From positions 372,001 to 436,000 of the IMG/VR virus record IMGVR_UViG_3300046665_000548: DNA of 64,000 bases; one strand, given 5' to 3'. Positions 24,580 through 63,604 of the stretch are shown in pieces. The notes under the pieces were generated by a model. That model was not told the DNA's origin. It made no database searches and saw only the letters and a program-made list of their open reading frames with translations. Numbering within the stretch: the stretch's first letter is position 1; every line of letters starts with the position of its first letter. The translations under genes and the position numbers were made by a program.

Positions 24580-24593
24580 GCCCTAAATAGTCG

Positions 24594-27813: not shown

Positions 27814-29271
27814 TCAGAACATTCTTACGCCGTGAAGAGCTTGGAACCGTAGAGCATCATCCCAAGTATTCACCAATGGCTCGCCCTTGATGTTCAAGCT
27901 AGTATTCAACAGCATTGGGCATCCGGTAGCTTTATACCAATCCATCAGAAGGCCATAAAACATTGGGTTCTGATCCTCAGTGAGGGTCTGGACGCGGGCC
28001 GTGTTGTCGTAGTGTGATATGGCGGGAAACAGATCGGGTCTCCTCACGGGGGCTACGAACTGCATGTAAGGGCTCGTCGCGACGGGCATCTCAAAATAAT
28101 CGTTGGCGAACTGCTCTAGGATAATCGGAGCGAACGGCCGGAACGGTTCGCGCTTCTTGATCCGATTCACGCGATCTTTCGTCGCCGGGCCGCGAGGGTC
28201 GGTGAGGAGAGAACGATTCCCTAGCGCCCGAGGGCCGAATTCGGCCCGGCCATTGGCCACGCCTACGACCTCTCCCGCCAAAAGAGCCTCCAGGCAGCCC
28301 TGGCGGTCGAATGGGCGGGCTATGTCGTGGCCCAGGTACGCAGAGCGCCAGTTCAATTGCTGGCGCTGGTAGGCCGCCACAGCGCCAATGCTGGAGCCAG
28401 CGTCGCCAGGGTTTGGCATGATCCAGATATTCTGGAATGCTCCTCCGGTCGCGATGCGAGAATTCGCAACACAATTTAGCGCCACGCCGCCTGCCAGCAC
28501 GAGATTAGGCGAACCGGTTTGCAAGGAAGCCCAGTCGATGAGGCTGATGAGATATTCTTCGGTGACTTCCTGGATAGAGGCGGCGATGTTCGCGTTGTCG
28601 GTGATCTCTGGACGCCAATCCCGTATTCCGCGATGAACGTTTTGCTTCAGACGAAATTCCGGCAGCCGTGCCTTCTGAACGAAATCCTGGCGGATGATGT
28701 CCGCGTAGATGGGTTTGCCAAGTGCGGCCATACCCATCAGAATGTATTCTTCCTCGTTCGGTTTGAAGCCGATCCGTTGAGTAAAGGCGCTGTACAGAAG
28801 ACCGAGACTGTGGGGATAATTCTGAGACCAAAGCTCGGTTAGATCATCGCCCTCGCCGTGCCACATGCTGATGGTGTTCCATTCGCCAATCGCATCAATG
28901 ACGAGAACAATCGCGTCAGAAAATCCACTTGTGAAATAACCAGCCGCAGCATGGCTTTCGTGGTGGCCGACATATTTGACCGGCGCGGTAAGACCATGTT
29001 GCTTGAGATAGCTCGCGCCGTCCGTGCGCATCACGCTGTCATATTGACCCGCGTATAGCTTCCGAGTGCGCTTCAGAAACGGCCTCTCATACCAAACGAT
29101 GAGATCGGGTTCGCCATGGACGCGAGCAGCGCTGATCAGGTCTGGGTGAAGATGGGCATCGTTCTTGACACGACTGTATCGTTCAGAATGGGAAGCGAAC
29201 AGAATTTCCTGATCTTTGATAACGGCTAGGCTTGCGTCGTGCTCGTTAGCGCTTATGCCGTAGATGACCAT
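27814..29271 (-). CDS. O-carbamoyltransferase (NodU/CmcH family)
   Basis: HDAS, SERYSRVKND, HHESHAA, LAGGVALNCVAN, GRAEFGPRALGNRS, RPFAP, LLNTSLN. Confidence 0.93.
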   Translation of the reverse strand: MVIYGISANEHDASLAVIKDQEILFASHSERYSRVKNDAHLHPDLISAARVHGEPDLIVWYERPFLKRTRKLYAGQYDSVMRTDGASYLKQHGLTAPVKYVGHHESHAAAGYFTSGFSDAIVLVIDAIGEWNTISMWHGEGDDLTELWSQNYPHSLGLLYSAFTQRIGFKPNEEEYILMGMAALGKPIYADIIRQDFVQKARLPEFRLKQNVHRGIRDWRPEITDNANIAASIQEVTEEYLISLIDWASLQTGSPNLVLAGGVALNCVANSRIATGGAFQNIWIMPNPGDAGSSIGAVAAYQRQQLNWRSAYLGHDIARPFDRQGCLEALLAGEVVGVANGRAEFGPRALGNRSLLTDPRGPATKDRVNRIKKREPFRPFAPIILEQFANDYFEMPVATSPYMQFVAPVRRPDLFPAISHYDNTARVQTLTEDQNPMFYGLLMDWYKATGCPMLLNTSLNIKGEPLVNTWDDALRFQALHGVRMF

Positions 29272-30095
29272 TTCTTCTCCAGTGCATCCTTCGCCATATC
29301 GAACACAAACTTGGCGTAAGCCGCATGTGCTCTTGGGCCAGGATGCATCATATCTCTCCCATAATCTCCCTGGGCAATGAATGACGGAAAGCGGTCAACG
29401 ACCATGTTATCAGTCCTAACGTAATCATAGAGAAACGGTTCTATCTCGTTAATGGGCTGAAAATCTCCCCAAATCCACGGGATGCCTGCTCCTCGGAGAA
29501 CCAATTCGATGAATTGCCAGTTCATCACCCAATTGTAGAAATCATTAGCATCTGTCTGAAGAGTAATGAGTGCCTTCTGCTCGTTGACAAAGAAATTAGT
29601 TCGAAGGACGTTGGGGATTAAAGCAATTCGATGATGGTAGTTGTTATAGTATTGGCGGCGCTGCATGCCTGGGAACAATACCACGACGAGTTCGGGTTTG
29701 ATAATATCAACGGTTTGATAGACAACCTGTGCCATTGCATCGCTACCATAGCCGGGCAAACCCAAATTGTGTTGTTCAAATTCTACGTTAAAGTGCTTAG
29801 ACAACATATCGGTCACGATAGACGTGTACACGGACTCGTACGGAACACCAATTCCGGTCGTGAACGAACACCCAACAAACATAAGTTTTGGTTTAGAAGA
29901 TTTCGGATCGAATTCCATGGATCGGTAGCCTCGGCTATTCACAGTATAGCCGAAATCGGTTGGCTTATATAAGTTGCCTTTGGCCTTATAGGTCTCTTTG
30001 GCGTCGCTCGGCCACCATGTAATTGTCCTGCCATAATCGCGAACGTTACCGGCCATCGCCTCTGGTATCTGGTCTTTAATCCAGAAGCGGGTCAT
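29253..30095 (-). CDS. SGNH/GDSL-like hydrolase or acyltransferase
   Basis: VGCSFTTG (block I), NLGLPGYG (block II), DMMHPG (block V). Confidence 0.7.
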   Translation of the reverse strand: MTRFWIKDQIPEAMAGNVRDYGRTITWWPSDAKETYKAKGNLYKPTDFGYTVNSRGYRSMEFDPKSSKPKLMFVGCSFTTGIGVPYESVYTSIVTDMLSKHFNVEFEQHNLGLPGYGSDAMAQVVYQTVDIIKPELVVVLFPGMQRRQYYNNYHHRIALIPNVLRTNFFVNEQKALITLQTDANDFYNWVMNWQFIELVLRGAGIPWIWGDFQPINEIEPFLYDYVRTDNMVVDRFPSFIAQGDYGRDMMHPGPRAHAAYAKFVFDMAKDALEKKWSSTA

Positions 30096-30145
30096 ATTCT
30101 TGTTTACCGCAAGGTGATGCATGAGACTTCCGGTTAAGGGCCTAC

Positions 30146-31378
30146 TTATTTATTGCTGTCCAGTATGGCCCAAAATTCAGGAAACACAGCGGCGTAACTT
30201 TCCTTTCGGTATTTGTCATGCCGATCTACGGTCTGGAGAAACGAGTCTAGGAGATTTTTTCCTGGGGCGCGCAGCAGGCTAATAATGCCGTCAAGCGGCT
30301 CGAACAAAATCGAACACTCGTCCACGCTCATTCCAGAAAGCTTTACGGCAATCGCTTCTTTGACTGGTTGTGGTAGGTTCATGGCGGTCATGTTGTCTGG
30401 ATTGTAGAGCATGTTTACCCAAACCCGCACGTTGAGATCACGAAAATACTGGACGTACTCAGGCAGGTAAAAAATGTTCAAGCTCGATACGGTGAGACAC
30501 ACATGGACATCCTTCGGCCCCATGGTTTCCAGGAAACGCTTCATGTTTTGCTCAACTAGCGGCCACTTAGCCGGATATCTCTGGTATTCGAACTGTTCTC
30601 CTGTGCCATCGATAGAGAGCATGATGTCTACGCGCTTGAAATGCGGGAATAGGTTTTCGATGGCGTCTTCCGGATAGATCGTTCCGTTCGTGTTGTAGTG
30701 AACGGTCTGGTTCTTCGACCATCCGTTATCAACCGCGTGTCGTAGAAGCTCAAAATGACGTTGAATGAGAAACGGCTCTCCGCCGTAAATCTCAAAGTGC
30801 TCAATATGCGGAAGCCATTCTTCAAGATCAGTCCAAAATCGCGGATTGTGCTCGTGCCAATTCATGAGCATCTTGCGTTCAAGCGGGAAACTAGCCGTGG
30901 ACAAGTTCTTCGCCGCATTGGTGATCACGTCGCTGCCATAGATGTCGATGGTCTCTTTGATCCATTTCGAGGAAGAGCCAACCGAACAGATACGGCACTT
31001 GAGGTTGCAGAGATTTCCAAGCTTCAGGTCCAGGAAGATCGGCTGAAGCTCGTCCTCTGGGACACTCAGTACGGCTTCCACTTTATTCCACCAACGCTTG
31101 TTCTCTCGAATGCGCTTGGATGTCTTACCAGCGGCTTCTTCGCGCCAGCATGACGAACATGCGGGGTGCTTAGTTCCTGCTACGAGCGCGCCTCGGAGAT
31201 CACGAACTGACTTGGACTTCCATACGTCCGTCATGCTGTCGCGTGCCAGAGTGAACTTGGTGCCGTCTTCCTTCTCGAAGAAATGCGTGCTCATACAGCA
31301 GGGAGCCACAAACCCGTCAGCGCGAGCTTCCAGATGGATGAAAGGCAGGATGCAAAAGGTATCGCTTATAGTAGACAT
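30146..31378 (-). CDS. Radical SAM enzyme 1 (class A, N-terminal twitch/SPASM-like domain)
   Basis: FCILPF..CC..CSSC; CNLKCRIC; GGEP. Confidence 0.92.
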   Translation of the reverse strand: MSTISDTFCILPFIHLEARADGFVAPCCMSTHFFEKEDGTKFTLARDSMTDVWKSKSVRDLRGALVAGTKHPACSSCWREEAAGKTSKRIRENKRWWNKVEAVLSVPEDELQPIFLDLKLGNLCNLKCRICSVGSSSKWIKETIDIYGSDVITNAAKNLSTASFPLERKMLMNWHEHNPRFWTDLEEWLPHIEHFEIYGGEPFLIQRHFELLRHAVDNGWSKNQTVHYNTNGTIYPEDAIENLFPHFKRVDIMLSIDGTGEQFEYQRYPAKWPLVEQNMKRFLETMGPKDVHVCLTVSSLNIFYLPEYVQYFRDLNVRVWVNMLYNPDNMTAMNLPQPVKEAIAVKLSGMSVDECSILFEPLDGIISLLRAPGKNLLDSFLQTVDRHDKYRKESYAAVFPEFWAILDSNK

Positions 31379-32571
31379 GCAAGCTCCGGGAAGGTCGTGG
31401 CAAAATCTTCTCCACGAAGATCGTCCATTTGCTTAAGTTTGTACCGAAGACGACCCAGCCATTGCGGCTCATGGGGCTGGCGAAGGCTAGTGATCGCGCC
31501 CTCCCAGCGACTGAGGGCCATTTGGTTTCCACCAACACTCTTCAGCCAATCCATGTGATCTTCGTATAGCTCGATAGCCTTTTCGCGAAGATTGTCGGGA
31601 GCCACGGATGGACGGAAATATTCAGGATATGTTAGAGGATTGATGTTCCATTCACTCGGCTCTACTAGTCCTTCCTCTACCCACGTGCGGTGGAAGGCTG
31701 GCATGTCGAGAAAATTCAGCACGCTCAAAGTAAAGTTAACGTAGAAATTAACGTTCGGGCATACGCGCATCATCTCTTTGCGATTGGCAACGATCTGATC
31801 CCACTTCATACCTTTGCGAATGTATTCGCCCTTTTCGCCCATGCCGTCCAGTGATGCCCCGACAACCACATACTTGAACTGATTCCAAAGTTCGAACACC
31901 TTGAGGTCTTTGAAGGCGGTCTGCGACATATTAGTATTGTAGCTGAGGTGCACGTCGAAGCGACCTTGCGCGGCGAGCATTTTTAAAATGCGGTAGTGCT
32001 CTTCCATCATCAATGGTTCGCCCCCCGCAAAGTAAATTTTCTCCACGGTCGGCAGAAAGCTTTCAATTTCTCCCCAAAGTTTTTCCGGATCATCCGGCCG
32101 CAGGATACGCTTGCTCGGCTTGCGACCTGACGCCTTTGCGTCATCGAACCAATTAGAGGAAAGCTCTGGTCCGCAGGTGCGGCATCGAAAATTACAGATA
32201 TTACTGAAACGGATATCCAAGTACGGCATGTTGATGCGATCAACGGTGCCATCCTCTTTCGTTTCGGAAACGATCTCCAGGTGATGCTTGAACGATTCGT
32301 TGTGGTCAATGCGCAGAGAACGGAAACCAGATTGCTCCATCTCGTAGCAGCGCGAGCATTCATCGGACGCCTTGTCCGCCAGCATGTTCAAACGAATCTG
32401 CTTCAGCTTCGGACTGTTCCAAACGTCTGCGAGCCCAGTTTCTTTGCCGATCTTTGCTATCGGCTTCTGTGAGTCCTGAACGCAACACAAATACGTGTTG
32501 CCGTTTGGCCAAGCATGCAGATGAGTCCATGGGACGAGACAGAAATGTTTGTTAGATAGTATATCAGTCAT
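31366..32571 (-). CDS. Radical SAM enzyme 2 (class A)
   Basis: FCLVPW..CC..CSRC; CNFRCRTC; GGEP. Confidence 0.92.
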   Translation of the reverse strand: MTDILSNKHFCLVPWTHLHAWPNGNTYLCCVQDSQKPIAKIGKETGLADVWNSPKLKQIRLNMLADKASDECSRCYEMEQSGFRSLRIDHNESFKHHLEIVSETKEDGTVDRINMPYLDIRFSNICNFRCRTCGPELSSNWFDDAKASGRKPSKRILRPDDPEKLWGEIESFLPTVEKIYFAGGEPLMMEEHYRILKMLAAQGRFDVHLSYNTNMSQTAFKDLKVFELWNQFKYVVVGASLDGMGEKGEYIRKGMKWDQIVANRKEMMRVCPNVNFYVNFTLSVLNFLDMPAFHRTWVEEGLVEPSEWNINPLTYPEYFRPSVAPDNLREKAIELYEDHMDWLKSVGGNQMALSRWEGAITSLRQPHEPQWLGRLRYKLKQMDDLRGEDFATTFPELACLL

Positions 32572-33781
32572 TTAGACCCTTCAGAAGAGCATACAATTCT
32601 GGGAAAACATCTTCTGATTTCTCGCTGCGATTGGCATCGAGAGCGCCGTTGTATGTGATGCCACGGCGTAGAAGGTCGGGATTACTGGGGTTATTTAGTA
32701 GCTGGCTTTTGATGCTATTGAAATCATAATCCGCCAGCACTGGCTCCATCTTGGCCAACGCAGCCATTTTGATGCGCTCGGGTAAAATCCATGGAGCCAA
32801 ATATTCTGGATCGTAGATATAGTTGAAATGCACGTGGAGGCCACGACCATGCTTCATATACTGGTAATACTCGGGGACTGTGAGTAGGTTTTGCCATCCA
32901 ATGGTCTGATTGACCGACGTGTTGATCCACGTTTCTTTCTGAAGTCGATCTAGGTTGCGTTCAACGTCCGCCCATTTCGTGCCATATCTGAGAAGCGCGT
33001 TTCGTTCTCCGAGATCGTCAATCGAGCAGGAGATACGAACTTCCTTGAACGAACGCCACACCTCGAAGGCGCTCTCCGGAAGGTTGGTCATGTTGATGTT
33101 GTACCAGAGCACGACATCCTTGGCCTTGCCGGAGGCGCGCAGCCGCTCCAGGAACTCCCAGTGTTTCTTGATCAGCGTCGGCTCGCCACCGTTGATGTAG
33201 ATCAGTTCCAGGTGGGTGGAGTTCTCAAACAGATCATCCCAGAACAGGTCTTTCTCCGGCCAATCGAAACCGGTCAAGCCTTGGTATGATCGAACGAAAT
33301 CAAACTTTTGTTCGAGTTGCGCGTACTCGACCACCCACTTAGACGAAGAGGCGGGATTGCAGGAGCGACATTTGACGTTGCAGATATTACCAAGTCGTAA
33401 TTCCACAAAACGCAGTTTGGGTGCAATCCGTCCGTCGTTGTCCGTCTCTAGCGCAGCAACCTCGCGAGTTAGGTCCGCAAAATTTTCATTCTCGGCAAGC
33501 CTTTTAGATTTCACGCCATTCTCTTCCTCACGGAAGCAACGCATGCAAGCGAGCGGCTTTCGGCCGTCAAGCATCTGCTTTCGAACCTGCCGAAAGTAGT
33601 CGCTATTCATGATCTCATCTGTAGAGTTTTGGTTCAGGTTTAACCACTCAGTGCTTCCATCTTCACGAAAATTGCGAGATCGGTTGACGCCTTTGTCGTG
33701 ATTGCTCACGCAGCACAACGTGACGCCGCCGTGGGGATGACTGGCTAGATGCAACCATGGGAGAACGCAAAACGTGCTCAT
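32564..33781 (-). CDS. Radical SAM enzyme 3 (class A)
   Basis: Start MSTFCVLPW at 33781 (ATGA overlap); CNVKCRSC; GGEP. Confidence 0.92.
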   Translation of the reverse strand: MSTFCVLPWLHLASHPHGGVTLCCVSNHDKGVNRSRNFREDGSTEWLNLNQNSTDEIMNSDYFRQVRKQMLDGRKPLACMRCFREEENGVKSKRLAENENFADLTREVAALETDNDGRIAPKLRFVELRLGNICNVKCRSCNPASSSKWVVEYAQLEQKFDFVRSYQGLTGFDWPEKDLFWDDLFENSTHLELIYINGGEPTLIKKHWEFLERLRASGKAKDVVLWYNINMTNLPESAFEVWRSFKEVRISCSIDDLGERNALLRYGTKWADVERNLDRLQKETWINTSVNQTIGWQNLLTVPEYYQYMKHGRGLHVHFNYIYDPEYLAPWILPERIKMAALAKMEPVLADYDFNSIKSQLLNNPSNPDLLRRGITYNGALDANRSEKSEDVFPELYALLKGLND

Positions 33782-34977
33782 ACCCAATGATCTTCTATTA
33801 GTTTGTACATCTCCGGAAATGTAGCCGCAAAATCCTCTTTGCGATACGCATCGCCCTCTTTGATCTCTTTTACGGCTCGCTTCATGAGATATTCGTCGTA
33901 CTCGGAATTCTCCATATGGTTCATCAGGGGCGTGACCGCAGCTAGCGTTTGCTCTCTCCAAACCTTTGACCGGAGATGATTACAGATCACATCCTTTGCT
34001 GCTCTCGGTAGAATACTCACTTGATACCACGGCGGAAAGTAAACAAGATTGTGCCATACGGTGTCTTCGATACCGAGTGTATCAAGATACTCATGCAGTT
34101 CGTGGATATAGTAAATGTTGTGCAGCGACACGGTATGCGTGATGCCGAAGTCGAACTTCATGCGGTCGTCTAATGAGTTTCGGAGGTTCGTAAAATACTC
34201 CAAATTGGATGCAGCAAGGGACCAGTTGCCTGGATGTCGAAGGTACTCAAACCGCTTGCCGACACCATCAACGCTTAGGCCAATCGCCATCCCTGCGAAA
34301 TTATCGATAATGCGCTCGATCAGCTTTTCGGGGCGTTGAGTGCAATTTGAAGACATCCGGATGCGAACGTTCTTCGCGTATCCCTTGTCGATGAACTCAT
34401 CTAGTACAGTGGCGAACTCCTTCATGAAGAAGGGCTCGCCTCCCATGAACTCCAAAGATCGTACATGCGGCATCCACTCGTCGCGGGTGTTCCAGAAGGC
34501 GCTATCATTCGAGATTATCTTCTGGCTACCGATTGGATCGAAACTGATATTGCGATCAATTGCTTCTTTAATCCACTTAGACGATGCGTGTGGATGGCAT
34601 GTTCGGCACTTTAGATTGCAAGTATTATTCAGTATTAGCTGCCAGTCATCCGGAAGCCCAGGCTCGGCGTCATAGTCGATTACTCGTCCATGATCGTCAG
34701 CCATTTTATTGTAGATCATGCGCTTGGAAGTTTTACCGTTTGCTTCATCCGACCAGCAAATGTTGCACGTCTGTGGCTTCTCACCGTCGCGAAACTGTTT
34801 TCGAAGCTTCTTCATGTATGGGCCATGAAAGATTTCGTTCACAGAACTGGTCTGGAGTTTCAACGGAACGCCGTCATCTCCGGTAATTTTCTCAGACGCG
34901 ATACAGCAAGCCCGCAATATGCCATTCGCTTCATTAGCCAAATGCGTCCAAGGCAGAGAACAATAAGTTTTAGTCAT
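33778..34977 (-). CDS. Radical SAM enzyme 4 (class A)
   Basis: MTKTYCSLPW (TGATG overlap); CNLKCRTC; GGEP. Confidence 0.92.
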   Translation of the reverse strand: MTKTYCSLPWTHLANEANGILRACCIASEKITGDDGVPLKLQTSSVNEIFHGPYMKKLRKQFRDGEKPQTCNICWSDEANGKTSKRMIYNKMADDHGRVIDYDAEPGLPDDWQLILNNTCNLKCRTCHPHASSKWIKEAIDRNISFDPIGSQKIISNDSAFWNTRDEWMPHVRSLEFMGGEPFFMKEFATVLDEFIDKGYAKNVRIRMSSNCTQRPEKLIERIIDNFAGMAIGLSVDGVGKRFEYLRHPGNWSLAASNLEYFTNLRNSLDDRMKFDFGITHTVSLHNIYYIHELHEYLDTLGIEDTVWHNLVYFPPWYQVSILPRAAKDVICNHLRSKVWREQTLAAVTPLMNHMENSEYDEYLMKRAVKEIKEGDAYRKEDFAATFPEMYKLIEDHWV

Positions 34978-36359
34978 CAGTTTTTCATCCACCAGCGGAG
35001 CACATCCGGATAGGGTTCAAATATTTGTTCGATTGTAATGCGACCGTTCTGGCCATCGCCGCGATGCCGGGCGAGACGTTGCAGAAACTCGCGCCCCTTG
35101 TAAAACGCTTCTTCGTATCGATCTGGGAACTGTTCTTCGAACGTTGGGCGAGTGCGCATGTCTTGTAGTGTCGTCACCAAGGTCTGAGTACGGTGGTTGA
35201 CCTTTGGCTCCATGTAACAGAGCAGATCATCAAGAACGTCATCCAGCACTTTACGTGGTAGCGCGAAAGGCGAAACTAGCTTCTCCGGATCGAACGCGTA
35301 AACGATCTTCGTCAAGATATCGACATCTAGTTCGTTGGCTAGATCGAAGAACTCTTTCATGTGGAGGAGGCCCGGAAGGGTCAGCGTCAGATCAAGCTTC
35401 ATGCGATCACGCAACTCTGGGACCTCAAGTCCGGCCTTAAAGTTGACGAGCCATTCGTCCCAGTTCAACCCAGTGCGGATGTACTCACCGACGCGGCCCG
35501 TCGCGTCAATCGAGCAGCACATTAGGTAATTCTTATAGTGCGGAAGGATGTCCTTAAACAGGTTCACGCCCTTCCAATCGATCCTGGACAGGTTCGTGTT
35601 GTAGCGCGCGTAGACGTTCTTGGAGTGGCCGCTTTCTACCATGTGGTGCATAAGCTCCCAGTGCTTTTCCCACATCAGCGGTTCGCCCCCGACCCAGTAA
35701 AGCTCTTCCACGATCCCCTGCTTGCACGCATCCGCGAGTTCCACCTCGACCGTTCCGGTCTGGAACTCTTCAATCTGAGCCTTCATCTCCGGCACCATCC
35801 AGGGGTCATAGATCGGAGACCACTCGTCATGCTTGCGCTTCTCGGCTTCCCAAGAAGACGATAGTTGATGACCGCACATACGGCACTTAAAGTTACAGAG
35901 ATTGTTGATCCGATAGTCGAAGCTGATGACCGGCAAGCTGAGATGTCCGGTGTCATCTGTGGCCGCAAACACCTCATCTACCTTTTCGTGAAACAGGTGA
36001 TTAAACCAGTTACGGTAGACATCAATGTTCAGTATTCGGTCGTTGCAGACCATACACTCAGGAATAACCTCGCCCGCCATATGAGCAAGTCGAACCTTCT
36101 TCAAGGCATCGCTATTCCAATGTTCTTCAAGCGTCTTCGGAGCATACCCGGTTGATGTGTTTTCGCCAGACCCGCTGTCGATATACTGTCGGATGTAGCT
36201 TGCTTCTTCTCTCGACGCACAGCAAAGCCGCCGTTCGCTCTGAGGCGAGATATAAGTGTGGGTAAACGGAGCCATGCAGAACGTTTTGTTCGGAGAATCC
36301 TCCTTGAAACGACCACTGGTTTCAAAGAGGGGTCGGACGCGCTTCGGCTGATGAATCAT
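34977..36359 (-). CDS. Radical SAM enzyme 5 (class A)
   Basis: FCMAPF..CC..CMVC; CNFKCRMC; GGEP. Confidence 0.92.
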   Translation of the reverse strand: MIHQPKRVRPLFETSGRFKEDSPNKTFCMAPFTHTYISPQSERRLCCASREEASYIRQYIDSGSGENTSTGYAPKTLEEHWNSDALKKVRLAHMAGEVIPECMVCNDRILNIDVYRNWFNHLFHEKVDEVFAATDDTGHLSLPVISFDYRINNLCNFKCRMCGHQLSSSWEAEKRKHDEWSPIYDPWMVPEMKAQIEEFQTGTVEVELADACKQGIVEELYWVGGEPLMWEKHWELMHHMVESGHSKNVYARYNTNLSRIDWKGVNLFKDILPHYKNYLMCCSIDATGRVGEYIRTGLNWDEWLVNFKAGLEVPELRDRMKLDLTLTLPGLLHMKEFFDLANELDVDILTKIVYAFDPEKLVSPFALPRKVLDDVLDDLLCYMEPKVNHRTQTLVTTLQDMRTRPTFEEQFPDRYEEAFYKGREFLQRLARHRGDGQNGRITIEQIFEPYPDVLRWWMKN

Positions 36360-36445
36360 GAACTAGAGTTTACGGAAATCCCTTGACGAAAACCATTTGT
36401 TTGGTAACGATCAGGTATAGCGAATCACCTACGAAAAGCGACGCA

Positions 36446-36700
36446 ATGCCCGGTGAACCCCACAATACTAATGCACCGGAACAAGATTGGCAGCGCCCAC
36501 GTAACTGTCATTGCCTAACCACACAGCAACGCGCTTGCTGTTACGAGCAATGCGACCCTGAAGACGTGGGTCGCATCATGCGGAAGGGCGAAGGATTGAT
36601 GGTCTTCGGATATTCGCTCGTGGCTGTAGTCGCCATCACTATCGTGATGTTCGCAGTTAAATGTACGTTTGGATCAGGGTGCTTTGGGCAGTATCAATAG
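36446..36700 (+). CDS. Small Cys-rich membrane protein on the opposite strand within the rSAM array
   Basis: CHC..CC..C followed by a TM helix; TTGACG-N13-TGGTA promoter-like site at 36383. Confidence 0.45.
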   Translation: MPGEPHNTNAPEQDWQRPRNCHCLTTQQRACCYEQCDPEDVGRIMRKGEGLMVFGYSLVAVVAITIVMFAVKCTFGSGCFGQYQ

Positions 36701-36783
36701 ATGAACGGATCGCGCTTGCGTAGTTTACGCAACTTGTTCTTCAATTTGATCCAGTCGATGAAGCGTTGAAAGAGTGTAATCAT
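36694..36783 (-). CDS. 29-aa basic peptide MITLFQRFIDWIKLKNKLRKLRKRDPFIY
   Basis: Manually translated ATG 36783 to TGA 36694; TAAATA at 36789-36794, 5 nt upstream. Below the ORF-track size cutoff. Confidence 0.7.
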   Translation of the reverse strand: MITLFQRFIDWIKLKNKLRKLRKRDPFIY

Positions 36784-36798
36784 ACGACTATTTAGGCG

Positions 36799-38199
36799 TT
36801 AGATTACAGACCCGCTGATCAATTCCTGGCGAAAACCTAGATTGGTCGTCGGGATAGTATTGAGCCAATCCCTCATGGAAGGGAACACGTCGATACTCTT
36901 ACCTCGTCGTACGTCATACTGTGCGTGGAAGCTCTTAAAATCCTGTTGGAGCTTGCCCATTTCGTCCGCACCTGGATGAGGTGTCTTAACCGCGTCGAGA
37001 TAGTCTGCCAGCCGCTGGATATTCTCGATCTCGAAAGACGATACGAGAGGATTGTCCTTAAGCTGGGCGCAGAGCGTCACTAAAGTGTCACGACGTTCCG
37101 CCAGTACGGCTGGCGGAAGGACGAGCGGGCTCATGAAACTCGGAAAACGCACGATATTGGCGCTCCACCGTACGCGTTCGCTGCCAAACTGCCGCTTCCA
37201 CTCAATCATAACGTCCAGGAACTCAGGCAAACTGAACAGGGAGAGATTGTTGATGGTCATCATCATGGTTAGCTGCTTCACGTTGCCATGGGTCATGACC
37301 TTTTCGACGTTGGCCTTCCAGGTGTCGAAAATCATCCCGTCTCGGATGTACTCTGCTTGAGCGCCCATGGCTTCGTTGGACGAGAAGATTTGCAGGTCCG
37401 GGACGGCATGCGATTTTTCAATCAGCCGGTCGATCAGTTCTGGCTTCCCGCCCAGGTTGGTATTGATCGCAAATTGAACCCCATTGGTGCCGTTTTCCTC
37501 AAAGAAATCGAACAGCTTCCAAACGTCCACCGACATCAAAGGCTCACCGCCAGTGATGCGAAGCTGCTTCAGTGTTTTGGATAGTTCTGGCCACCACTTC
37601 CAGAATGCAGCGATATACGGGTTTCCTTCATTGCGTTTTCCGTACGGCTCGGCCCATGCTCCGTTGTGCTGGAACGCACCAGCGCCGTCACTAACGAGGT
37701 TCTGGTACGCGCCATGCGTGTTGATATCCTTGGCCCATGTAGTGGAGAACCCAGCGTTACAATACGAACATGCGAAGTTGCAGGTACGATTGAATGCGAT
37801 CTCAAGCGTCTCCAGATGCACGTCCGCATCCCATGGCATTTTGGCGATTTGGTCGATTGATGTTTGATCGTATCGGGAAGATTTGAAAGCTCGATCAGAA
37901 ACGTTGTTCCGATTAATCCCCTCAATTCGCCAGCAGTAGTCGCACTCAGAAGGCTGATGCCCGTCGAGCATCAGCTTGCGCATCTTTTTCTTGTGCACGG
38001 TGTTGTGAAGCGCTGACGGATTGACGGCGATCTCGTCTAGCTGAATCTTGTGTGCAGGCGGTAGGTGGCATGACGCGGTTGCGCCATGGCCGAGCCAGAT
38101 GGTTGAGTCGAGCCATTTTGTTGCACAGAACGACGGCGATACCGGATCGAGCACGCGAGCCTGATAGTCCTGCCAGGATTCGTCAGCCTTCTTTGTCAT
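36799..38199 (-). CDS. Radical SAM enzyme 6 (class B, FCxxKW N-terminus)
   Basis: FCATKW..SCH..ECDYCW; CNFACSYC; GGEP. Confidence 0.92.
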   Translation of the reverse strand: MTKKADESWQDYQARVLDPVSPSFCATKWLDSTIWLGHGATASCHLPPAHKIQLDEIAVNPSALHNTVHKKKMRKLMLDGHQPSECDYCWRIEGINRNNVSDRAFKSSRYDQTSIDQIAKMPWDADVHLETLEIAFNRTCNFACSYCNAGFSTTWAKDINTHGAYQNLVSDGAGAFQHNGAWAEPYGKRNEGNPYIAAFWKWWPELSKTLKQLRITGGEPLMSVDVWKLFDFFEENGTNGVQFAINTNLGGKPELIDRLIEKSHAVPDLQIFSSNEAMGAQAEYIRDGMIFDTWKANVEKVMTHGNVKQLTMMMTINNLSLFSLPEFLDVMIEWKRQFGSERVRWSANIVRFPSFMSPLVLPPAVLAERRDTLVTLCAQLKDNPLVSSFEIENIQRLADYLDAVKTPHPGADEMGKLQQDFKSFHAQYDVRRGKSIDVFPSMRDWLNTIPTTNLGFRQELISGSVI

Positions 38200-38480
38200 T
38201 GCTGAGCACCATGCCATCTCAGCTTAAACAGTATCGCGTGCTTCGGATTGTCGAACATATACATCACGTTTTCCGGTAGTCCCCCGATATACCCCTCATT
38301 CCAATACGTCCAATTGTCAGTATACATTGAACCGACGTGATCCATACACCAAAAGAGCCGCGCTTCGGCGGTTGGGCCTGTCGGGAGAGTGATGATATGC
38401 GGAAACCGCATCATCTCTGCGCGAACCTCTTCCAGCCTCTTTTGGGCTTGTTCCTCTGGCGTAAGATCGTCAATCATCAT
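38196..38480 (-). CDS. Small motif-family protein coupled to rSAM6
   Basis: MFDNPKHAILFKLRW; ATGA overlap with the rSAM6 start. Confidence 0.65.
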   Translation of the reverse strand: MMIDDLTPEEQAQKRLEEVRAEMMRFPHIITLPTGPTAEARLFWCMDHVGSMYTDNWTYWNEGYIGGLPENVMYMFDNPKHAILFKLRWHGAQQ

Positions 38481-39915
38481 TACCCATGACTGAGTCGAAC
38501 CAACCGTCAATGTCCTCTTGGGGTTCGGCTTCCGCAGACTCGCCACGCAGCCACGAACCAAGCTCGGGTGGGAACGTCGCGTAGATGTCCTTTCCACGTC
38601 GCTTGTCATACTGCTCGTAGAAGTTCTTAAAATCTGCAACCAGCCGTTCCATCGGAGCCGGGTCGGCATGTGGCTCATCCGCGTTGCGCAGATAGTTGAT
38701 CAAGCGCTCGGTGTGTTCCTTCTCGTGGTCCTGAAACAGCGGTCGGTTTGTTTTGCTGCACAGTTCACCGGCCGCCAACGTCTTGCGCAGCCAAGCCTCA
38801 AGCTTGTCAGCGATGGATTGCCGGATAGCAAGCGGCAGCACGAGAGGGCTTTGGAACGTCGGCCAACGCAGGATATTCATGGTGATGGCTGGAAAGTTAT
38901 GGTGATAACTGCGCTTCATTTCCATCACGTCATCCAAGAACTCAGTGATCGAGAACAGGCACAGGCTATTGATCGTCATCATACAGTGCAGGCTCTTAAC
39001 GTTGCCATGCGTTGCGAGATGATGAATATTCGCCTTCCATTGCTTGTAGTCCATTCCGTCACGGATGTACTCGGCTTGTGCACCGAATGCTTCGCACGAC
39101 GTGTAGATGTCGAGGTTATCCACGGCATGGCTCTTCGTAACCAGTCGATCAATGAACTCTTGTTTCGCGCCCAAATTTGAATTGATCGCGAAATGCATTT
39201 TCGTGCCTGGGTTCTTCTCGAACCAGTCAAATAGCCGCCAAACATCGACGCTCATCAACGGCTCGCCGCCAGTGATGCGAATCTGCTGGAGCGTCTGAGT
39301 CAATTCAGGCCACCACTTCCAGAACGCCTCGATATACGGATTTGGCTGAGCGCGCCCGAAAGGCGCTGCGCTAGGATGGGTGTGCGTGTAGTGCTGGCGC
39401 TTATCGGATGATAGCCCGGTGTACGGCCCGTCCGTCTTGATGTCTTTCACCCACGTGGTGGAAAATGACGGATTGCAGTACGAACAAGCAAAGTTGCACG
39501 TCCTGTCGAAAGCAATTTCGAGGGTCTTTAGCGATGCATCATCATCTGGGTCAGCCGCTGCCATGGCTGCGATCTCTTTGTCTGTAGAGATAAGAGTCTT
39601 CCAAACACGGTCCGACACCACCTCAGGACCAAGGTCTTCAAACTTCCAGCAATATTCGCACTCGCTAGGACGCTCGCCTTCGAGCATCAGCTTACGCATC
39701 TTCTTCTTGTGCCGCGTGTTATGAATGGCACTTGGATTGTGCTGGATTTCTTCGACCTCGATCTGATGCGATGGCGGGTGATGACACGAAGCAGTTTGGC
39801 CACCGGCAAGCCAAATAGTGGCGTTGTTCCACTTAGCGGCGCAGAACGACTTAGATACGGGATCGATTACCCGAGCCTTGTAGTCGAGATAGCTTTCGAT
39901 GTTATTCTTAGGCAT
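38470..39915 (-). CDS. Radical SAM enzyme 7 (class B)
   Basis: FCAAKW..SCHHP..ECEYCW; CNFACSYC; GGEP. Confidence 0.92.
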   Translation of the reverse strand: MPKNNIESYLDYKARVIDPVSKSFCAAKWNNATIWLAGGQTASCHHPPSHQIEVEEIQHNPSAIHNTRHKKKMRKLMLEGERPSECEYCWKFEDLGPEVVSDRVWKTLISTDKEIAAMAAADPDDDASLKTLEIAFDRTCNFACSYCNPSFSTTWVKDIKTDGPYTGLSSDKRQHYTHTHPSAAPFGRAQPNPYIEAFWKWWPELTQTLQQIRITGGEPLMSVDVWRLFDWFEKNPGTKMHFAINSNLGAKQEFIDRLVTKSHAVDNLDIYTSCEAFGAQAEYIRDGMDYKQWKANIHHLATHGNVKSLHCMMTINSLCLFSITEFLDDVMEMKRSYHHNFPAITMNILRWPTFQSPLVLPLAIRQSIADKLEAWLRKTLAAGELCSKTNRPLFQDHEKEHTERLINYLRNADEPHADPAPMERLVADFKNFYEQYDKRRGKDIYATFPPELGSWLRGESAEAEPQEDIDGWFDSVMGNDD

Positions 39916-40127
39916 TAAATTTGGTCACTCCAGAACATCTTGTATAGCACGCGGTCTTTCGGATCGGCAAAATGAACGTAATAGTTCCCTACCCCATGTC
40001 CGAAACTAAACGCGCCGTTCGTCTGCTCAAATACCCATTCTGCCGCATCGAGAAAGTGCGTGTTCCATGTACCGTGCCGCCAAGGGTGAGGCATCAGTTC
40101 GCATTCGTACGAAAATATCTTCATCAT
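39915..40127 (-). CDS. Small motif-family protein coupled to rSAM7 (start uncertain)
   Basis: VHFADPKDRVLYKMFW; TAATG overlap with the rSAM7 start. Confidence 0.6.
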   Translation of the reverse strand: MMKIFSYECELMPHPWRHGTWNTHFLDAAEWVFEQTNGAFSFGHGVGNYYVHFADPKDRVLYKMFWSDQI

Positions 40128-40216
40128 TGTTCGGCAGTGACATTTTGCCGTAGCTGAAGTTATGCTCCGTACGATTTTCTCCATACATGGAGTGCACTTC
40201 ATGTCGAGAGGAAAAC

Positions 40217-41620
40217 CTATTGGGCTGCTGTTCGACATAGTTCCCAAAAGTCTTCCATCTCTGGGAAGCTCTCCAAGAATTTCGTACCTCGACGGCGATC
40301 ATGTTCAGTAAAGAAGCGAAAGAAATCGGCGCGATCACGCTTCAGCTTCTCTGGCGGAAGCTGATCACCTGCCCGCATCCATTCGAGATCGCGTTCAAGC
40401 TTGCTGATCTCGTAATCCTTCACACCTCGCAAGAACGTGTCGGACGTTTCGATCTTCGTTTTGAGGTATTCGATATCATCGGCCAGGATGTCTCGATAGC
40501 GCTGCGGAAGAATCTGGATTGACTGCCACGCAGGCGTACTCAACAGGGGAGGATCGAACCAGATCAATTGGCGATCATCATTGAACTCCTGCCGCATCTG
40601 AATGATCTGATCCAACAATGGTCGCAGCGAAGTGATCGACATAACGTTCATCGTGATGATGTACGAGATAGATCGACGCGCCGGTTTTTCGAGATACTTG
40701 CGTGAGTTCTCCAGCATGTAGTCGAAGTTCATGCCGTGACGAATGTACTCGGCCTTCTTGCCGTACGCGTCTACGCTCACGAACGTCATCAAATGCTCAA
40801 CTGCGCACTGATCCGTTATCGTGTTGGCCTGTTCGATAAACTTAGCGAACAGGCGAGGATCGGGACAAAAATTTGAGGTGAGACCAAGCTGAAGGTCCGG
40901 CTTTGGATTCTTGATGATGTAATCGAACACCTTGTAGGTGTTCTTGTCCATCAACGGCTCCCCTCCGGTCATGCGGAAATGCTTCAGGCCCTTGTACATT
41001 TCAGGCCACCATTTCCAGAAAGCGTCCACATAAGGATTGGCATCCTTGTGGGGGATCGGCATAAGCCCTTTCTGCCTTAAGTGCTCGATGCTATTGTGAG
41101 GCAAGGTGGTAGGGTACGGACCAAAGCGCTCAACCTCCTCGCGCCACGTGGTAGACAGATGGGGGCTGCAATAGCTGCATTTGAAATTGCAGGCAGAGTT
41201 GAAATTGACCTCGACATATCGCGGCGACACATCCCAATCCCAAGGATGCTCCATGATCTCATCGAACGTTTCCATGGCCCATTGTTCGCCAGACCGATAG
41301 TGGCGGTCGCTGAGATGGTCTCCAGGCTGATCTTCGATATTCCAGCAATACTGACACTCGGACGGCCGGTCGCCCTCCAGCATCATCTTGCGCATGCGCT
41401 TCTTATGCTGCGTGTTATGGAGCGCGGTCGGGTTAACGGCGAGTTCATCAAGCGGCACCTTGTGCACGCGAGGATGATAACAGCTTTGCGTCAGGCCCGC
41501 AGTGAGATTTATCGATACCTGATGCCACTTTGCGATGCACATACCCGGCCCGACTGAATCCAGCTTGGGCTTCACCTGTTCTGCGTTCGTCAGGTAGACG
41601 CTTTTGATCTTATCGTTCAT
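40217..41620 (-). CDS. Radical SAM enzyme 8 (class B)
   Basis: MCIAKW..SCYHP..ECQYCW; CNFKCSYC; GGEP. Confidence 0.92.
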   Translation of the reverse strand: MNDKIKSVYLTNAEQVKPKLDSVGPGMCIAKWHQVSINLTAGLTQSCYHPRVHKVPLDELAVNPTALHNTQHKKRMRKMMLEGDRPSECQYCWNIEDQPGDHLSDRHYRSGEQWAMETFDEIMEHPWDWDVSPRYVEVNFNSACNFKCSYCSPHLSTTWREEVERFGPYPTTLPHNSIEHLRQKGLMPIPHKDANPYVDAFWKWWPEMYKGLKHFRMTGGEPLMDKNTYKVFDYIIKNPKPDLQLGLTSNFCPDPRLFAKFIEQANTITDQCAVEHLMTFVSVDAYGKKAEYIRHGMNFDYMLENSRKYLEKPARRSISYIITMNVMSITSLRPLLDQIIQMRQEFNDDRQLIWFDPPLLSTPAWQSIQILPQRYRDILADDIEYLKTKIETSDTFLRGVKDYEISKLERDLEWMRAGDQLPPEKLKRDRADFFRFFTEHDRRRGTKFLESFPEMEDFWELCRTAAQ

Positions 41621-63200: not shown

Positions 63201-63604
63201 TTACCAAGAGCATCGTAAACGTCATCGTCTGTTTGGATCGCCTGAACCTTCAGGAGACCGCGAGCAGCTTGATTACGGCGAGGATTGTAGGAGAGAAAGC
63301 GGGCAAGGCGCAAAATGCTCTCGCGAGCCTCTGCCTTCTCAAGAAAGTTTTCACGGGCATTGATGTCGGTCTTGAACGCAAGAATGCCGGAAAGCCACGC
63401 AAGCAGATCGATAATCGCGATGAACTCGGAAGATTCGATCCAGTCGTTGAAATCTTCAGGATAGTTGACGCGGATGTACTCGCGAAGCGCAGCAGAGATC
63501 GTCTGAGGATCGGAAGAGTTGAAATTGATTTGCGTGAAAGCGCGGTATAGAACCTGCCAGTCTTGGGCAGCGAACAACTCGCTCTGGCGTTGAACGGAAG
63601 ACAT
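60299..63604 (-). CDS. Baseplate wedge protein (T4 gp6-like)
   Basis: NYPEDFNDWIESSE, NARENFL..ARESILRLARFLSYNP, FGDGRFGEAP, QNRMVSGEDY. Confidence 0.9.
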   Translation of the reverse strand: MSSVQRQSELFAAQDWQVLYRAFTQINFNSSDPQTISAALREYIRVNYPEDFNDWIESSEFIAIIDLLAWLSGILAFKTDINARENFLEKAEARESILRLARFLSYNPRRNQAARGLLKVQAIQTDDDVYDALGNNLQNRILNWNNPDDPDWFERIVLVLNSVFVSTNPFGVPLKNGTLAGVKTQQYRINSRFADLDLSYAAKVGGDTMDFEVINTDFDETLGITERTPNTEAALHMLYRTDGNGNASADTGFFMGFRQGILKRAQYNILNPIENQTIDIDVANINDTDVWVQSLDDNGDVTAQWEKVPLMLNENITFNSIPADIRKVFSVTTRDEDQITLRFGDGRFGEAPVGRLRAWYRSSNGQQYQIRPFEMSQIRIDVPYFNRRGVQRTLTITLGLESPVSNSAPAETEEQIRLRAPQVYSTQNRMVSGEDYNAFPLQSNLATKIKAVNRVYSGHSRFIDLNDPTGNYQDTNVFSDDGMFYKEPQTTFVEIPLSDNVSADAILGTYIQPSVKSSDAFNYVHDFLIQDTRRGAIPVPGGMTWYRVSDGRFSSTGWFNANSDLLLPGAMLFITPPGGGDGQWVTVSDRTGTPSSPPGEGSPGPIMLSQGIESGWIVTRILPRYASTLSNTITQAILAKLVNRLSFTLWYDYNSPDGMNHWTLRDPANLDDLPNRSDTAIKIMSADYVSNALWRFRTKGLRYVFESIENVRFYFDGQKAVESLLRQQDEDYIRVLKVNPDPNTGQPLNQDYDLTVDRMIYYADGFGDPNRIVIRFSDKDADGYPDVPNTYYNIVNPDDAKNSYLFWYRKPDLLWAPYYSMVVYESDQDRQVDDLVATGTVAFQINGARPFSFWLKTDTGWTFQQRAFRYGVGHGPNVGAKWIKQGGTVGPVPIGARMYFQWKHFAPSDRRIDPAKTNIIDIFVLTSEYDFLTRDWIANGALARSLPTAPTELDLRMSFANFENFKMFSDEIIWRPVRYKYLFGTGADAMLRAKFKVVRLANSSMSDGEIKSRVIKAIDEFFKAERWDFGETFYFTELAAYVHQQLAISISSFVLVPESDTGVFGDGFEVQSRSDELFISTAQVTDITIIQSNTPTNLRMA

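What the first reader, a model, noticed from the sequence alone, without database searches (positions are those of the whole stretch)
36694..36794. Hidden 29-aa peptide gene ending DPFIY, with its own late promoter, in the middle of the rSAM array
Seen: the minus-strand ORF MITLFQRFIDWIKLKNKLRKLRKRDPFIY, missed by the ORF track. TAAATA lies 5 nt before its ATG in a context (CCTAAATAGTCGtATG) almost identical to that ahead of the S8-M23 gene (CCTAAATAGTCGATG). It is the first minus-strand gene upstream of rSAM5-1, SGNH and the carbamoyltransferase. From memory: small proteins ending in a PFIY-type motif (DUF5989-like) occur beside NodU carbamoyltransferase and SGNH genes in bacteria. Inference: the peptide is a RiPP-like precursor for the SPASM/twitch enzymes, or an obligate partner/anchor of the carbamoyltransferase module. 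The amphipathic basic helix plus aromatic tail fits either role.
Basis: partly seen in the sequence, partly recalled or inferred. Interest (0 to 1): 0.75.

Follow-up and report, generated by a model that had tools for sequence, protein, structure and literature searches.

The report
Carbamoyltransferase partner micro-protein, DPFIY tail
The 29-residue ORF is a real, widely conserved but unnamed micro-protein that travels with a sugar/metabolite O-carbamoyltransferase (not with the radical-SAM enzymes) in phages and bacteria, and its invariant DPFIY tail probably docks into that enzyme.

Summary
The ORF (36694-36783, minus) and its TAAATA-N5-ATG context are exactly as described. ORF length alone is not beyond chance, but conservation settles it. 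The same basic-helix peptide ending (K/R)(K/R)DPF(I/L)Y occurs in over 100 of the phage, metagenome and bacterial loci fetched, and in 442 protein clusters. D, P, F and Y are invariant across 33 nucleotide versions that use synonymous codons freely. It tracks the NodU/TobZ-type carbamoyltransferase (CT), not the rSAM genes. Of 80 viral loci fetched through the CT alone, 71 carry it, always on the CT strand: 46 abut or overlap the CT start (often ATGA), and 46 have no rSAM nearby. Only 12 of 80 loci fetched through an rSAM have it. It also occurs as a C-terminal tail on larger proteins and downstream of the CT, so it acts in trans. Pfam DUF5989 does not recognise it, and it has no membrane helix. 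True DUF5989 proteins (ending APFIYTLF) flank only the longer ~570-aa CT class and the short peptide only the 485-aa class. A complex prediction gave weak support (0.41 against 0.00 for controls), placing DPFIY in the acceptor pocket. In this window the gene sits 7.4 kb upstream of the only CT. Verdict: CT partner supported; RiPP precursor not supported.

The parts
36694..36783 (-). 29-codon micro-protein gene (stop included): N-terminal hydrophobic/aromatic stretch, K/R-rich stretch, invariant C-terminal DPFIY
   Evidence: sequence. Orthologues in the fetched phage, metagenome and bacterial loci. Invariant D/P/F/Y with free synonymous codons. 442 clusters in the profile search.
36789..36794 (-). 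TAAATA promoter-like element, 5 nt before the ATG. No further typical TAAATA-N3-8-ATG site lies between here and the carbamoyltransferase on this strand.
27814..29271 (-). The genome's only NodU/TobZ-type (class III) O-carbamoyltransferase, 485 aa: the inferred partner of the peptide, 7.4 kb downstream on the same strand
   Evidence: Pfam Carbam_trans_N/C. NodU model. Single copy. Solved relatives NovN, GdmN and TobZ. Predicted contacts with peptide residues 25-29.
29253..30122 (-). SGNH/GDSL-like gene overlapping the carbamoyltransferase start. In the nearest relatives the peptide gene lies between this gene and the carbamoyltransferase, or just before this gene.
   Evidence: Weak GDSL matches. 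Order SGNH-peptide-CT in L098 and L102; order peptide-SGNH-like-CT in L085 and L096 (second gene opens with a GDS motif), and peptide-DUF6071 gene-CT in L099.
30146..36359 (-). Five tandem rSAM genes (SPASM-like domain N-terminal to the rSAM core) lying between the peptide gene and SGNH-CT: context, not the peptide's conserved partner
   Evidence: domains. (no co-occurrence with the peptide independent of the CT).
36360..36693 (.). 334-nt spacer between the peptide gene and the first rSAM gene: unexplained
   Evidence: No Rfam match. Fold z-score 0.46. No homologues by tblastx. No terminator-like site on the minus strand within it.
36799..38217 (-). Upstream rSAM gene (472 aa), used as the first handle to find related loci
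24582..24593 (+). The only other CCTAAATAGTCG in the genome, directly before the ATG of the 851-aa S8/M23 peptidase ORF

Best explanation
The ORF encodes a translated micro-protein. It belongs to a large, unnamed family of 29-40-residue peptides (variable hydrophobic/aromatic N-terminus, K/R-rich helix, invariant C-terminal D-P-F-I/L-Y followed by 0-2 residues). These peptides act in trans as accessory subunits of the short (about 485 aa) class III O-carbamoyltransferases. Shown: the peptide sequence is under selection; it is linked to the carbamoyltransferase gene and not to rSAM genes; in the ancestral arrangement its stop overlaps the enzyme's start; and the tail is portable, occurring free or fused to other proteins. 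Inferred: the DPFIY tail docks into the acceptor-substrate pocket of the Kae1-like domain, against the oxyanion-hole loop, helix 2, loop 3 and a shortened loop 4. There it would complete or gate the pocket, much as loop 4' of the partner monomer does in the GdmN dimer. The basic N-terminal part, or in fusions a whole enzyme, would bring a polyanionic surface or a partner activity to the enzyme. In this megaphage the gene has been separated from SGNH-CT by a five-gene rSAM block. It now stands first in that same-strand block, behind its own TAAATA promoter, so it is probably still co-transcribed with its partner but no longer translationally coupled to it.
For: Conservation and coding: 12 of 80 rSAM-anchored loci, 18 peptide-anchored loci and 71 of 80 CT-anchored viral loci carry it. 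D, P, F and Y are invariant in 33 distinct nucleotide versions with all synonymous codons in use. There are 442 clusters at E<=1e-3 among 1.84 billion representatives. Linkage: every occurrence is on the CT strand and none on the opposite strand. 46 of 80 abut or overlap the CT start and 14 more lie within 1.5 kb upstream. 10 of 14 free peptides overlap the CT start as ATGA. Action in trans: it lies downstream of the CT in 4 loci and 2.4-8 kb upstream in 5. It forms the C-terminal tail of 355-378-aa class-II-aldolase-like proteins and of a 156-aa protein. Class specificity: the short peptide occurs only with close 485-aa CTs (9/17), and DUF5989-like proteins only with ~570-aa CTs (39/63). The genome has one CT and one such peptide. 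Docking: the complex prediction gave 'weak support', ipSAE 0.41 (runs 0.40-0.47), best of 3 controls 0.00. That mark was reached by 58 of 80 solved complexes and 2 of 110 mismatched pairs, but scores of 0.60 or under came from only 7 of those 80 solved complexes and from both passing mismatches. Confident contacts are peptide residues 25-29 with CT 74, 76, 127-128, 158-172 and 212-217. By alignment to GdmN these are the pocket elements defined crystallographically (PMC9633730). It is also present, unannotated, in cultured Ralstonia phage RsoM2USA.
Against: No experiment shows translation or binding. No RNA run holding the region was listed. The complex score is in the range the tool itself calls more often wrong than right unless the prior was high, and the calibration held no chain under 30 residues. 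The contact residues are equally conserved in CTs with and without a nearby peptide, so there is no covariation support. 9 of 80 viral and about half of the close bacterial CTs have no peptide in the DNA held. In this window the peptide is 7.4 kb from the CT. If DUF5989 is homologous, its expected N-in/C-out topology (my inference from the K/R residues before the membrane helix) would put PFIY on the far side of the membrane from a cytoplasmic enzyme, which fits a pocket-docking role poorly.
Confidence: 0.6

Rival explanations
1. The peptide is itself the acceptor or a scaffold. The carbamoyltransferase would O-carbamoylate the invariant C-terminal tyrosine, or build on the tail as amino-group carrier proteins and pearlin scaffolds are built on. 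The product would be a modified peptide, or a carrier-bound intermediate that other locus enzymes process.
For: The tail is predicted in the acceptor pocket, next to the residues aligned with the GdmN oxyanion hole. Tyr is invariant. The peptide and enzyme genes overlap at stop/start, which would suit matched amounts of the two products.
Against: The tail also occurs fused to whole enzymes, which fits docking better than a consumable substrate. The related DUF5989/SxtK proteins accompany enzymes whose acceptor is a small molecule (saxitoxin pathway, PMC2679770). The catalytic base H11 and the metal ligands are not among the confident contacts.
Confidence: 0.12
2. It is a truncated DUF5989/SxtK homologue whose job is localisation. 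The basic helix replaces the membrane helix and holds the carbamoyltransferase at the anionic membrane surface or on a polyanionic acceptor. The PFIY motif would serve something other than pocket docking.
For: Both classes share PF(I/L)Y 0-3 residues from the C-terminus, a W/F-rich N-terminus followed by K/R, and a CT neighbour. hhalign aligns the tails at E 2.8e-4. The net charge is +7 to +10.
Against: The hhalign probability is only 41% over 8 columns. Pfam DUF5989 gives no match even at E<=10. The hydrophobic moment is not above shuffles. The only invariant part is the tail, not the helix.
Confidence: 0.15
3. It is a RiPP precursor matured by the adjacent radical-SAM/SPASM enzymes.
For: In this window it sits between two rSAM blocks and heads the five-gene block. 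The tail is aromatic.
Against: 68 of 80 rSAM-anchored loci lack it, and the 12 that have it also show the CT or end just after the peptide. 46 of 71 peptide-bearing CT loci have no rSAM homologue within 9 kb. Bacterial carriers such as Streptomyces, Agromyces and Nocardia have no rSAM homologue nearby. The peptide has no Cys and no variable core.
Confidence: 0.05
4. It is a cis-acting leader or upstream ORF (an arrest or coupling peptide) that only regulates translation of the gene behind it.
For: ATGA stop/start overlap with the CT in most loci. The C-terminus is conserved right before the stop and is preceded by a run of basic residues, as in some arrest peptides (general knowledge).
Against: It is found downstream of the CT, several kb away with its own promoter (as in this window), and as the C-terminal tail of full-size proteins. 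In this window a 334-nt spacer without recognisable structure follows it.
Confidence: 0.05

Closest known systems
DUF5989 (Pfam PF19451) / SxtK, the ~50-aa proteins encoded beside NodU/SxtI-type carbamoyltransferases
   Same: A very small protein encoded next to, and on the same strand as, a class III O-carbamoyltransferase. It has a W/F-rich N-terminus followed by K/R, and PF(I/L)Y within three residues of the C-terminus. Its function is unknown in the literature: SxtK is listed as 'Unknown' and is only proposed to act 'in conjunction with' SxtI (PMC2679770).
   Different: The short peptide has no membrane helix and is 29-40 aa rather than about 50. Its tail is (K/R)(K/R)DPFIY(K) rather than AAPFIY(T/S)LF. 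It is not recognised by the Pfam model, and profile-profile similarity is limited to 8 columns. It pairs with a different CT class (485 aa against ~570 aa), with no overlap between the two pairings.
Loop 4' of the partner monomer in the GdmN carbamoyltransferase homodimer
   Same: A short polypeptide segment supplied in trans that forms part of the acceptor pocket of the Kae1-like domain (PMC9633730). The peptide's predicted contacts fall on the same pocket elements.
   Different: In GdmN the segment belongs to a second copy of the enzyme, held in place by a dimerisation domain that the 485-aa enzymes lack. Here the segment would be a separate gene product. This is inference from a weakly supported model only.
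Conserved basic C-terminal tail of Bud32 in the KEOPS complex (Kae1 partner)
   Same: A Kae1-fold catalytic subunit depends on an accessory protein whose conserved, basic C-terminal tail is required for activity (PMC11621456).
   Different: Bud32 is a full-size kinase-fold ATPase, its tail contacts the tRNA substrate, and the system makes t6A. There is no sequence relationship. This is an analogy only.
rSAM/SPASM RiPP precursors (e.g. PqqA, SCIFF-type and mycofactocin precursors; named from general knowledge)
   Same: A short ribosomal peptide with a conserved aromatic C-terminus, encoded among rSAM genes in this window.
   Different: It does not co-occur with rSAM genes across loci. It has no Cys or variable core. 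Its conserved neighbour is a carbamoyltransferase.

Membership tests
DUF5989 (PF19451) / SxtK | Match to the Pfam model at or above its 27-bit cut-off | tested here: not met
   No match at E<=10 for the window peptide, for the whole genome in six frames, or for three orthologues at E<=1. True members from bacterial CT loci score 56-88 bits in the same search.
DUF5989 (PF19451) / SxtK | Central hydrophobic membrane-spanning helix in a protein of about 50 aa | tested here: not met
   The peptide is 29 aa with no hydrophobic run of about 18 residues; compare alignment A4 of DUF5989 proteins.
DUF5989 (PF19451) / SxtK | PF(I/L)Y motif within three residues of the C-terminus | tested here: met
   Alignments A3 and A4. 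hhalign aligns KrDPFIYk with aPFIYs at E 2.8e-4.
DUF5989 (PF19451) / SxtK | Homology over the length of the protein (profile-profile) | tested here: inconclusive
   hhalign probability 41%, with only 8 aligned columns.
DUF5989 (PF19451) / SxtK | Encoded beside a NodU/SxtI-type carbamoyltransferase | tested here: met
   Met at family level: 71 of 80 CT-anchored viral loci, 46 of them abutting the CT. In this window itself the CT is 7.4 kb downstream on the same strand and is the only CT in the genome.
Short basic DPFIY micro-protein family (unnamed; defined here) | 25-45 aa (or a C-terminal tail); at least 4 K/R in the 12 residues before an invariant D-P-F-I/L-Y; 0-4 residues after it | tested here: met
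   The window peptide aligns with 31 others, with D25, P26, F27 and Y29 invariant. The profile built from the family finds 442 clusters.
Short basic DPFIY micro-protein family (unnamed; defined here) | Same strand as, and in the same genome as, a 485-aa-type class III carbamoyltransferase | tested here: met
rSAM/SPASM-matured RiPP precursor | Consistent co-occurrence with its maturase gene across genomes | tested here: not met
   68 of 80 rSAM loci have no peptide, and 46 of 71 peptide loci have no rSAM homologue within 9 kb.
rSAM/SPASM-matured RiPP precursor | Enzyme-dependent modification of the peptide | not testable with these tools
   Needs co-expression and mass spectrometry.
Cis-acting leader peptide / upstream ORF | Always directly upstream of the regulated gene; its function does not require the free peptide | tested here: not met
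   Found downstream of the CT (4 loci), 2.4-8 kb away (5 loci and this window), and fused to larger proteins.

The most novel reading that the evidence does not exclude
The DPFIY peptide is not merely a subunit but the acceptor or a carrier. The carbamoyltransferase would O-carbamoylate its invariant C-terminal tyrosine, or elaborate a group on the tail. That would make this a new class of ribosomal peptide modification or carrier system, widespread in phages and bacteria, and the membrane-bound DUF5989/SxtK proteins would be its membrane-anchored counterpart.
Probability: 0.1. Interest if true: 0.8.

Novelty: new variant of a known kind. Interest (0 to 1): 0.58.

Why it matters
Class III O-carbamoyltransferases (NodU, TobZ, NovN, GdmN, SxtI) tailor antibiotics, toxins, Nod factors and glycans. 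The small genes that accompany many of them (SxtJ/SxtK, DUF5989) have been listed as 'unknown' since 2008-2009. This finding defines a second class of such companions that is soluble and lacks a membrane helix. The class is abundant in phages and present in actinomycete isolates, has a five-residue invariant tail, and includes free, fused and relocated natural variants. That turns the old question of what these mini-proteins do into a directly testable one, using co-expression, tail mutants and a structure. A cultured phage (RsoM2USA) is available as an experimental system. The finding also shows that gene callers and GenBank records routinely miss this gene.

Tried and rejected
- **tblastn against cultured phages:** a 30-aa orthologue found nothing, although RsoM2USA has the gene. 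The likely causes are the short query and the low-complexity filter, so that blank means nothing.
- **Megablast against phages:** the 13-kb region gave no match.
- **First complex job:** My alignments held sequences from a locus fetched with `fetch of an annotated region` and three GTG/TTG-start peptides shown with M. I rebuilt the alignments from the window and `search for related loci` loci only, and that job ran. Its verdict is 'weak support', not a pass to lean on.
- **Covariation between peptide presence and CT contact residues:** no discrimination, because the residues are conserved in both groups. The R/K bias at position 217 (35/81 against 0/16) is not phylogeny-corrected, and I do not rely on it.
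- **Hydrophobic moment of the first 24 residues:** not above shuffles (window 0.16, fraction of shuffles at least as high 0.76; L054 0.35, fraction 0.20). I therefore dropped 'amphipathic helix' as a claim.
- **334-nt spacer:** no Rfam family, no unusual fold, no homologues, and no peptide remnant at the window's SGNH-CT junction.
- **Sequencing runs:** none was listed for 3 kb. Three DNA runs (soil, leaf litter, one coded organism) held about 5% of the sampled words for 1 kb, and no RNA run was listed. `read laying` was therefore not used, and transcription is untested.
- **Chance ORF:** rejected because of the conservation.

Full report
**1. Observation**

The window is bases 372001-436000 of a single 607,744-bp virus record with 51.7% G+C. 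The record encodes a tail sheath and tail-fibre-like proteins, so it is a contractile-tailed megaphage.

The minus-strand ORF 36694..36783 exists exactly as described. It has 29 codons and ends DPFIY. TAAATA lies at 36794-36789, five bases before the ATG, inside the 15-nt gap after the stop of the upstream rSAM gene.

The 12-mer CCTAAATAGTCG occurs only twice in the genome. The second copy lies directly before the ATG of the 851-aa S8/M23 peptidase ORF at 24594.

TAAATA is a real upstream signal:
- It is 18.8-fold enriched in the 50 nt before predicted starts.
- Its spacing peaks 4-5 nt before the ATG, and it also precedes tRNA genes.
- It drives the tail sheath, a tail-fibre-like protein and the peptidase.

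'Late' is therefore plausible, but the timing is untested.

The ORF alone is not beyond chance. By my estimate from base composition, about one random 29-codon frame in four is open, and many other TAAATA-N5-ATG sites are followed by ORFs of only 9-35 codons.

**2. The peptide is conserved and under selection as a peptide**

- The upstream rSAM protein found 434 relatives in viral contigs. Among the 80 loci fetched, 12 carry a same-strand ORF of 29-38 codons with a K/R-rich stretch and a ...DPFIY end.
- In 33 distinct nucleotide versions of the last eleven codons, D, P, F and Y never change, while GAT/GAC, all four CCN, TTT/TTC, ATC/ATT/ATA and TAT/TAC are all used. Selection therefore acts on the translated product, not on an RNA or DNA signal.
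- A profile search of 1.84 billion cluster representatives found 442 clusters at E<=0.001. Most members are 30-50 aa with the match at the C-terminus.
- The only names in public sources are 'hypothetical protein'.
- Pfam, NCBIfam and the DUF5989 model give no match.

**3. What it travels with**

In all 18 peptide-anchored loci, the next or next-but-one gene is a NodU/TobZ-type carbamoyltransferase (CT) that is 39-60% identical to the window's CT at 27814-29271. In 10 of 14 free peptides the stop overlaps the CT start as ATGA.

The unbiased test used 80 viral loci fetched through the CT alone. Of these, 71 carry the peptide, always on the CT strand and never on the other strand:

| Position of the peptide relative to the CT | Loci |
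|---|---|
| Abutting or overlapping the CT start | 46 |
| Within 1.5 kb upstream | 14 |
| Elsewhere (4 just after the CT stop; 5 at 2.4-8 kb upstream, as in this window) | 11 |
| None found | 9 |

The rSAM genes do not show this linkage:
- 68 of 80 rSAM-anchored loci have neither peptide nor CT.
- The 12 rSAM-anchored loci with the peptide also show the CT, or end just after the peptide.
- 46 of the 71 peptide-bearing CT loci have no rSAM homologue within 9 kb.

The peptide therefore tracks the CT, not the rSAM enzymes.

The genome has exactly one CT and one DPFIY ORF. In the nearest large relatives the order is SGNH-peptide-CT (L098, a 457-kb contig with 60% CT identity; L102, a 636-kb contig with 73% identity). 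In L085 and L096 the order is peptide, a gene that opens with a GDS motif (SGNH-like), then the CT. In RsoM2USA (L099) a DUF6071-family gene lies between the peptide and the CT. In this window five rSAM genes lie between the peptide gene and SGNH-CT, and the peptide gene has its own TAAATA site.

No typical TAAATA-N3-8-ATG site and no minus-strand terminator-like site in the spacer separates it from the block. Co-transcription with the CT is therefore likely, although this is an inference.

**4. It acts in trans and the tail is portable**

The same ...KKLEELRKRDPFIYR end forms the C-terminus of 355-378-aa proteins with class-II aldolase/GatZ-like domains directly upstream of the CT (L090, L093, L094, L198). 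It also ends a 156-aa protein and 50-aa acidic proteins. Together with the copies found downstream of the CT and far from it, this argues against a purely cis-acting upstream ORF.

**5. Relation to DUF5989/SxtK**

A scan of bacterial genomes with the CT alignment returned two CT classes.

| CT class | Small-protein companion | Count |
|---|---|---|
| Common ~570-aa type (34-38% identity) | ~50-aa membrane proteins ending AAPFIY(T/S)LF; bona fide DUF5989, 56-88 bits | 39 of 63 loci; none has the short class |
| Close 485-aa type (46-73% identity) | Short basic peptide | 9 of 17 loci; none has a DUF5989-like ORF |

The carriers of the short peptide include isolates of Streptomyces, Agromyces, Nocardia and Geodermatophilus, and MAGs of Haliscomenobacter and Legionellales.

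hhalign aligns only the 8-residue tails (E 2.8e-4, probability 41%).

The two classes share the PFIY tail and the CT neighbour. That combination is unlikely to be coincidence, and a common origin by loss or gain of the membrane helix is plausible but unproven.

The literature lists SxtK as 'Unknown' and only proposes that it acts 'in conjunction with' SxtI (PMC2679770). No paper in the searched library mentions DUF5989.

**6. How it may work**

A complex prediction of the window's CT with the window's peptide, each supplied with its alignment, gave 'weak support'. The score was 0.41 (runs 0.40-0.47), and the best of 3 controls scored 0.00. That mark was reached by 58 of 80 solved complexes and by 2 of 110 mismatched pairs. 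Scores of 0.60 or under came from only 7 of those 80 solved complexes and from both of the mismatches that passed. The calibration held no chain under 30 residues.

The confident contacts are peptide residues 25-29, the DPFIY tail itself, with CT residues 74, 76, 127-128, 158, 161-162, 165, 171-172, 212-215 and 217.

Alignment to GdmN (7vyj) maps these residues as follows:
- Window H11 corresponds to the catalytic base H27.
- H103, H107 and D126 correspond to the iron ligands H133, H137 and D156.
- Contacts 127-128 correspond to G157/R158, the oxyanion hole in loop 2.
- Contacts 158-165 fall in helix 2.
- Contacts 171-172 fall in loop 3.
- Contacts 74 and 76 fall at the end of helix 1.
- Contacts 212-217 fall in the loop-4 region, where the window enzyme is 11 residues shorter.

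These are the elements that form the acceptor pocket in the GdmN crystal structures, where loop 4' of the partner monomer completes the pocket in trans (PMC9633730).

My preferred model, which is inferred and not shown, is that the tail completes or gates the acceptor pocket of the short CTs, which lack a dimerisation domain. The variable N-terminal part would bring a charged surface or a fused enzyme to the CT.

A loose analogy is the conserved basic C-terminal tail of Bud32, which is required for Kae1 activity in KEOPS (PMC11621456).

**7. Caveats**

- No RNA run was listed for the region.
- The contact residues are conserved whether or not a peptide gene is nearby.
- The hydrophobic moment does not support 'amphipathic'.
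- If DUF5989 is homologous, its expected topology would place PFIY across the membrane from the enzyme (my inference).
- The 334-nt spacer after the peptide gene is unexplained.

**8. Verdict**

The peptide is a real gene of a large unnamed family. The 'partner of the carbamoyltransferase' reading is supported by strong comparative evidence and by weak structural prediction. The 'RiPP precursor for the rSAM enzymes' reading is not supported.

It is a new variant, without a membrane helix, of the known but uncharacterised kind of small carbamoyltransferase companions.

Noticed in passing
window 30146-36359 (-), five ORFs: In all five tandem rSAM proteins the SPASM-like Fe-S domain (Pfam PF13186) matches at the N-terminus (about residues 9-140), before the Radical_SAM core (about residues 120-350). 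This is the reverse of the usual order. The three rSAM proteins upstream (36799-41620) show no SPASM match.
   Followed up: no
whole genome (G000), e.g. genome positions 136666(+), 149093(+), 523712(+), 253288(-), 343185(+): Many other intergenic TAAATA-N3-7-ATG sites are followed by ORFs of only 9-35 codons, and TAAATA also precedes tRNA genes. Some may be further hidden micro-genes. Others may simply mark transcript starts, with the ATG forming part of the initiator context.
   Followed up: no
window 36383-36700 (+), especially 36599-36700: A convergent plus-strand ORF fills the spacer. Its last 33 codons, preceded by GAAGGA, encode a hydrophobic, membrane-helix-like peptide with a Cys-rich stretch upstream. 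Its stop overlaps the end of the DPFIY gene. No homologues were found by tblastx among the loci held.
   Followed up: partly
L099:5038-5148 (= MG752970.1 complement 125891..126001): Cultured Ralstonia phage RsoM2USA (344 kb) has an unannotated orthologue ending IRKQDPFIYK in the 109-nt gap between RsoM2USA_201 and _200. Its ATG overlaps the _201 stop (ATGA). It is followed by a DUF6071-family gene and then the CT, RsoM2USA_199, which is annotated only as a hypothetical protein.
   Followed up: yes
L102 (CAWFYW010000001.1, 635,980-bp contig): A contig filed as an 'uncultured Alphaproteobacteria' MAG carries the closest CT (73% identity) with the SGNH-peptide-CT order, and its size is close to that of this 608-kb phage. 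It may be a sister megaphage binned as a bacterium.
   Followed up: no
L090:8993-10057, L093, L094, L198: The DPFIY tail is fused to 355-378-aa proteins with GatZ/KbaZ-like and class-II fructose-bisphosphate-aldolase-like domains directly upstream of the CT. This natural fusion hints at which activity is coupled to carbamoylation.
   Followed up: partly
protein P0001 (75 aa, metagenome): Two DPFIY peptides occur in tandem in one 75-aa predicted protein, with both copies complete. This is either a real duplication or a read-through call.
   Followed up: no
window CT residue 217 (27814-29271, -): Among CTs with a nearby peptide, the residue aligned with R217 (a predicted contact) is R/K in 35 of 81. 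Among CTs without a peptide it is never basic (0 of 16). The comparison is not corrected for phylogeny.
   Followed up: partly
window 49287-60299 (-) and 60299-63604 (-): Two very large ORFs (3670 aa and 1101 aa) lie back to back on the minus strand. They were not examined.
   Followed up: no
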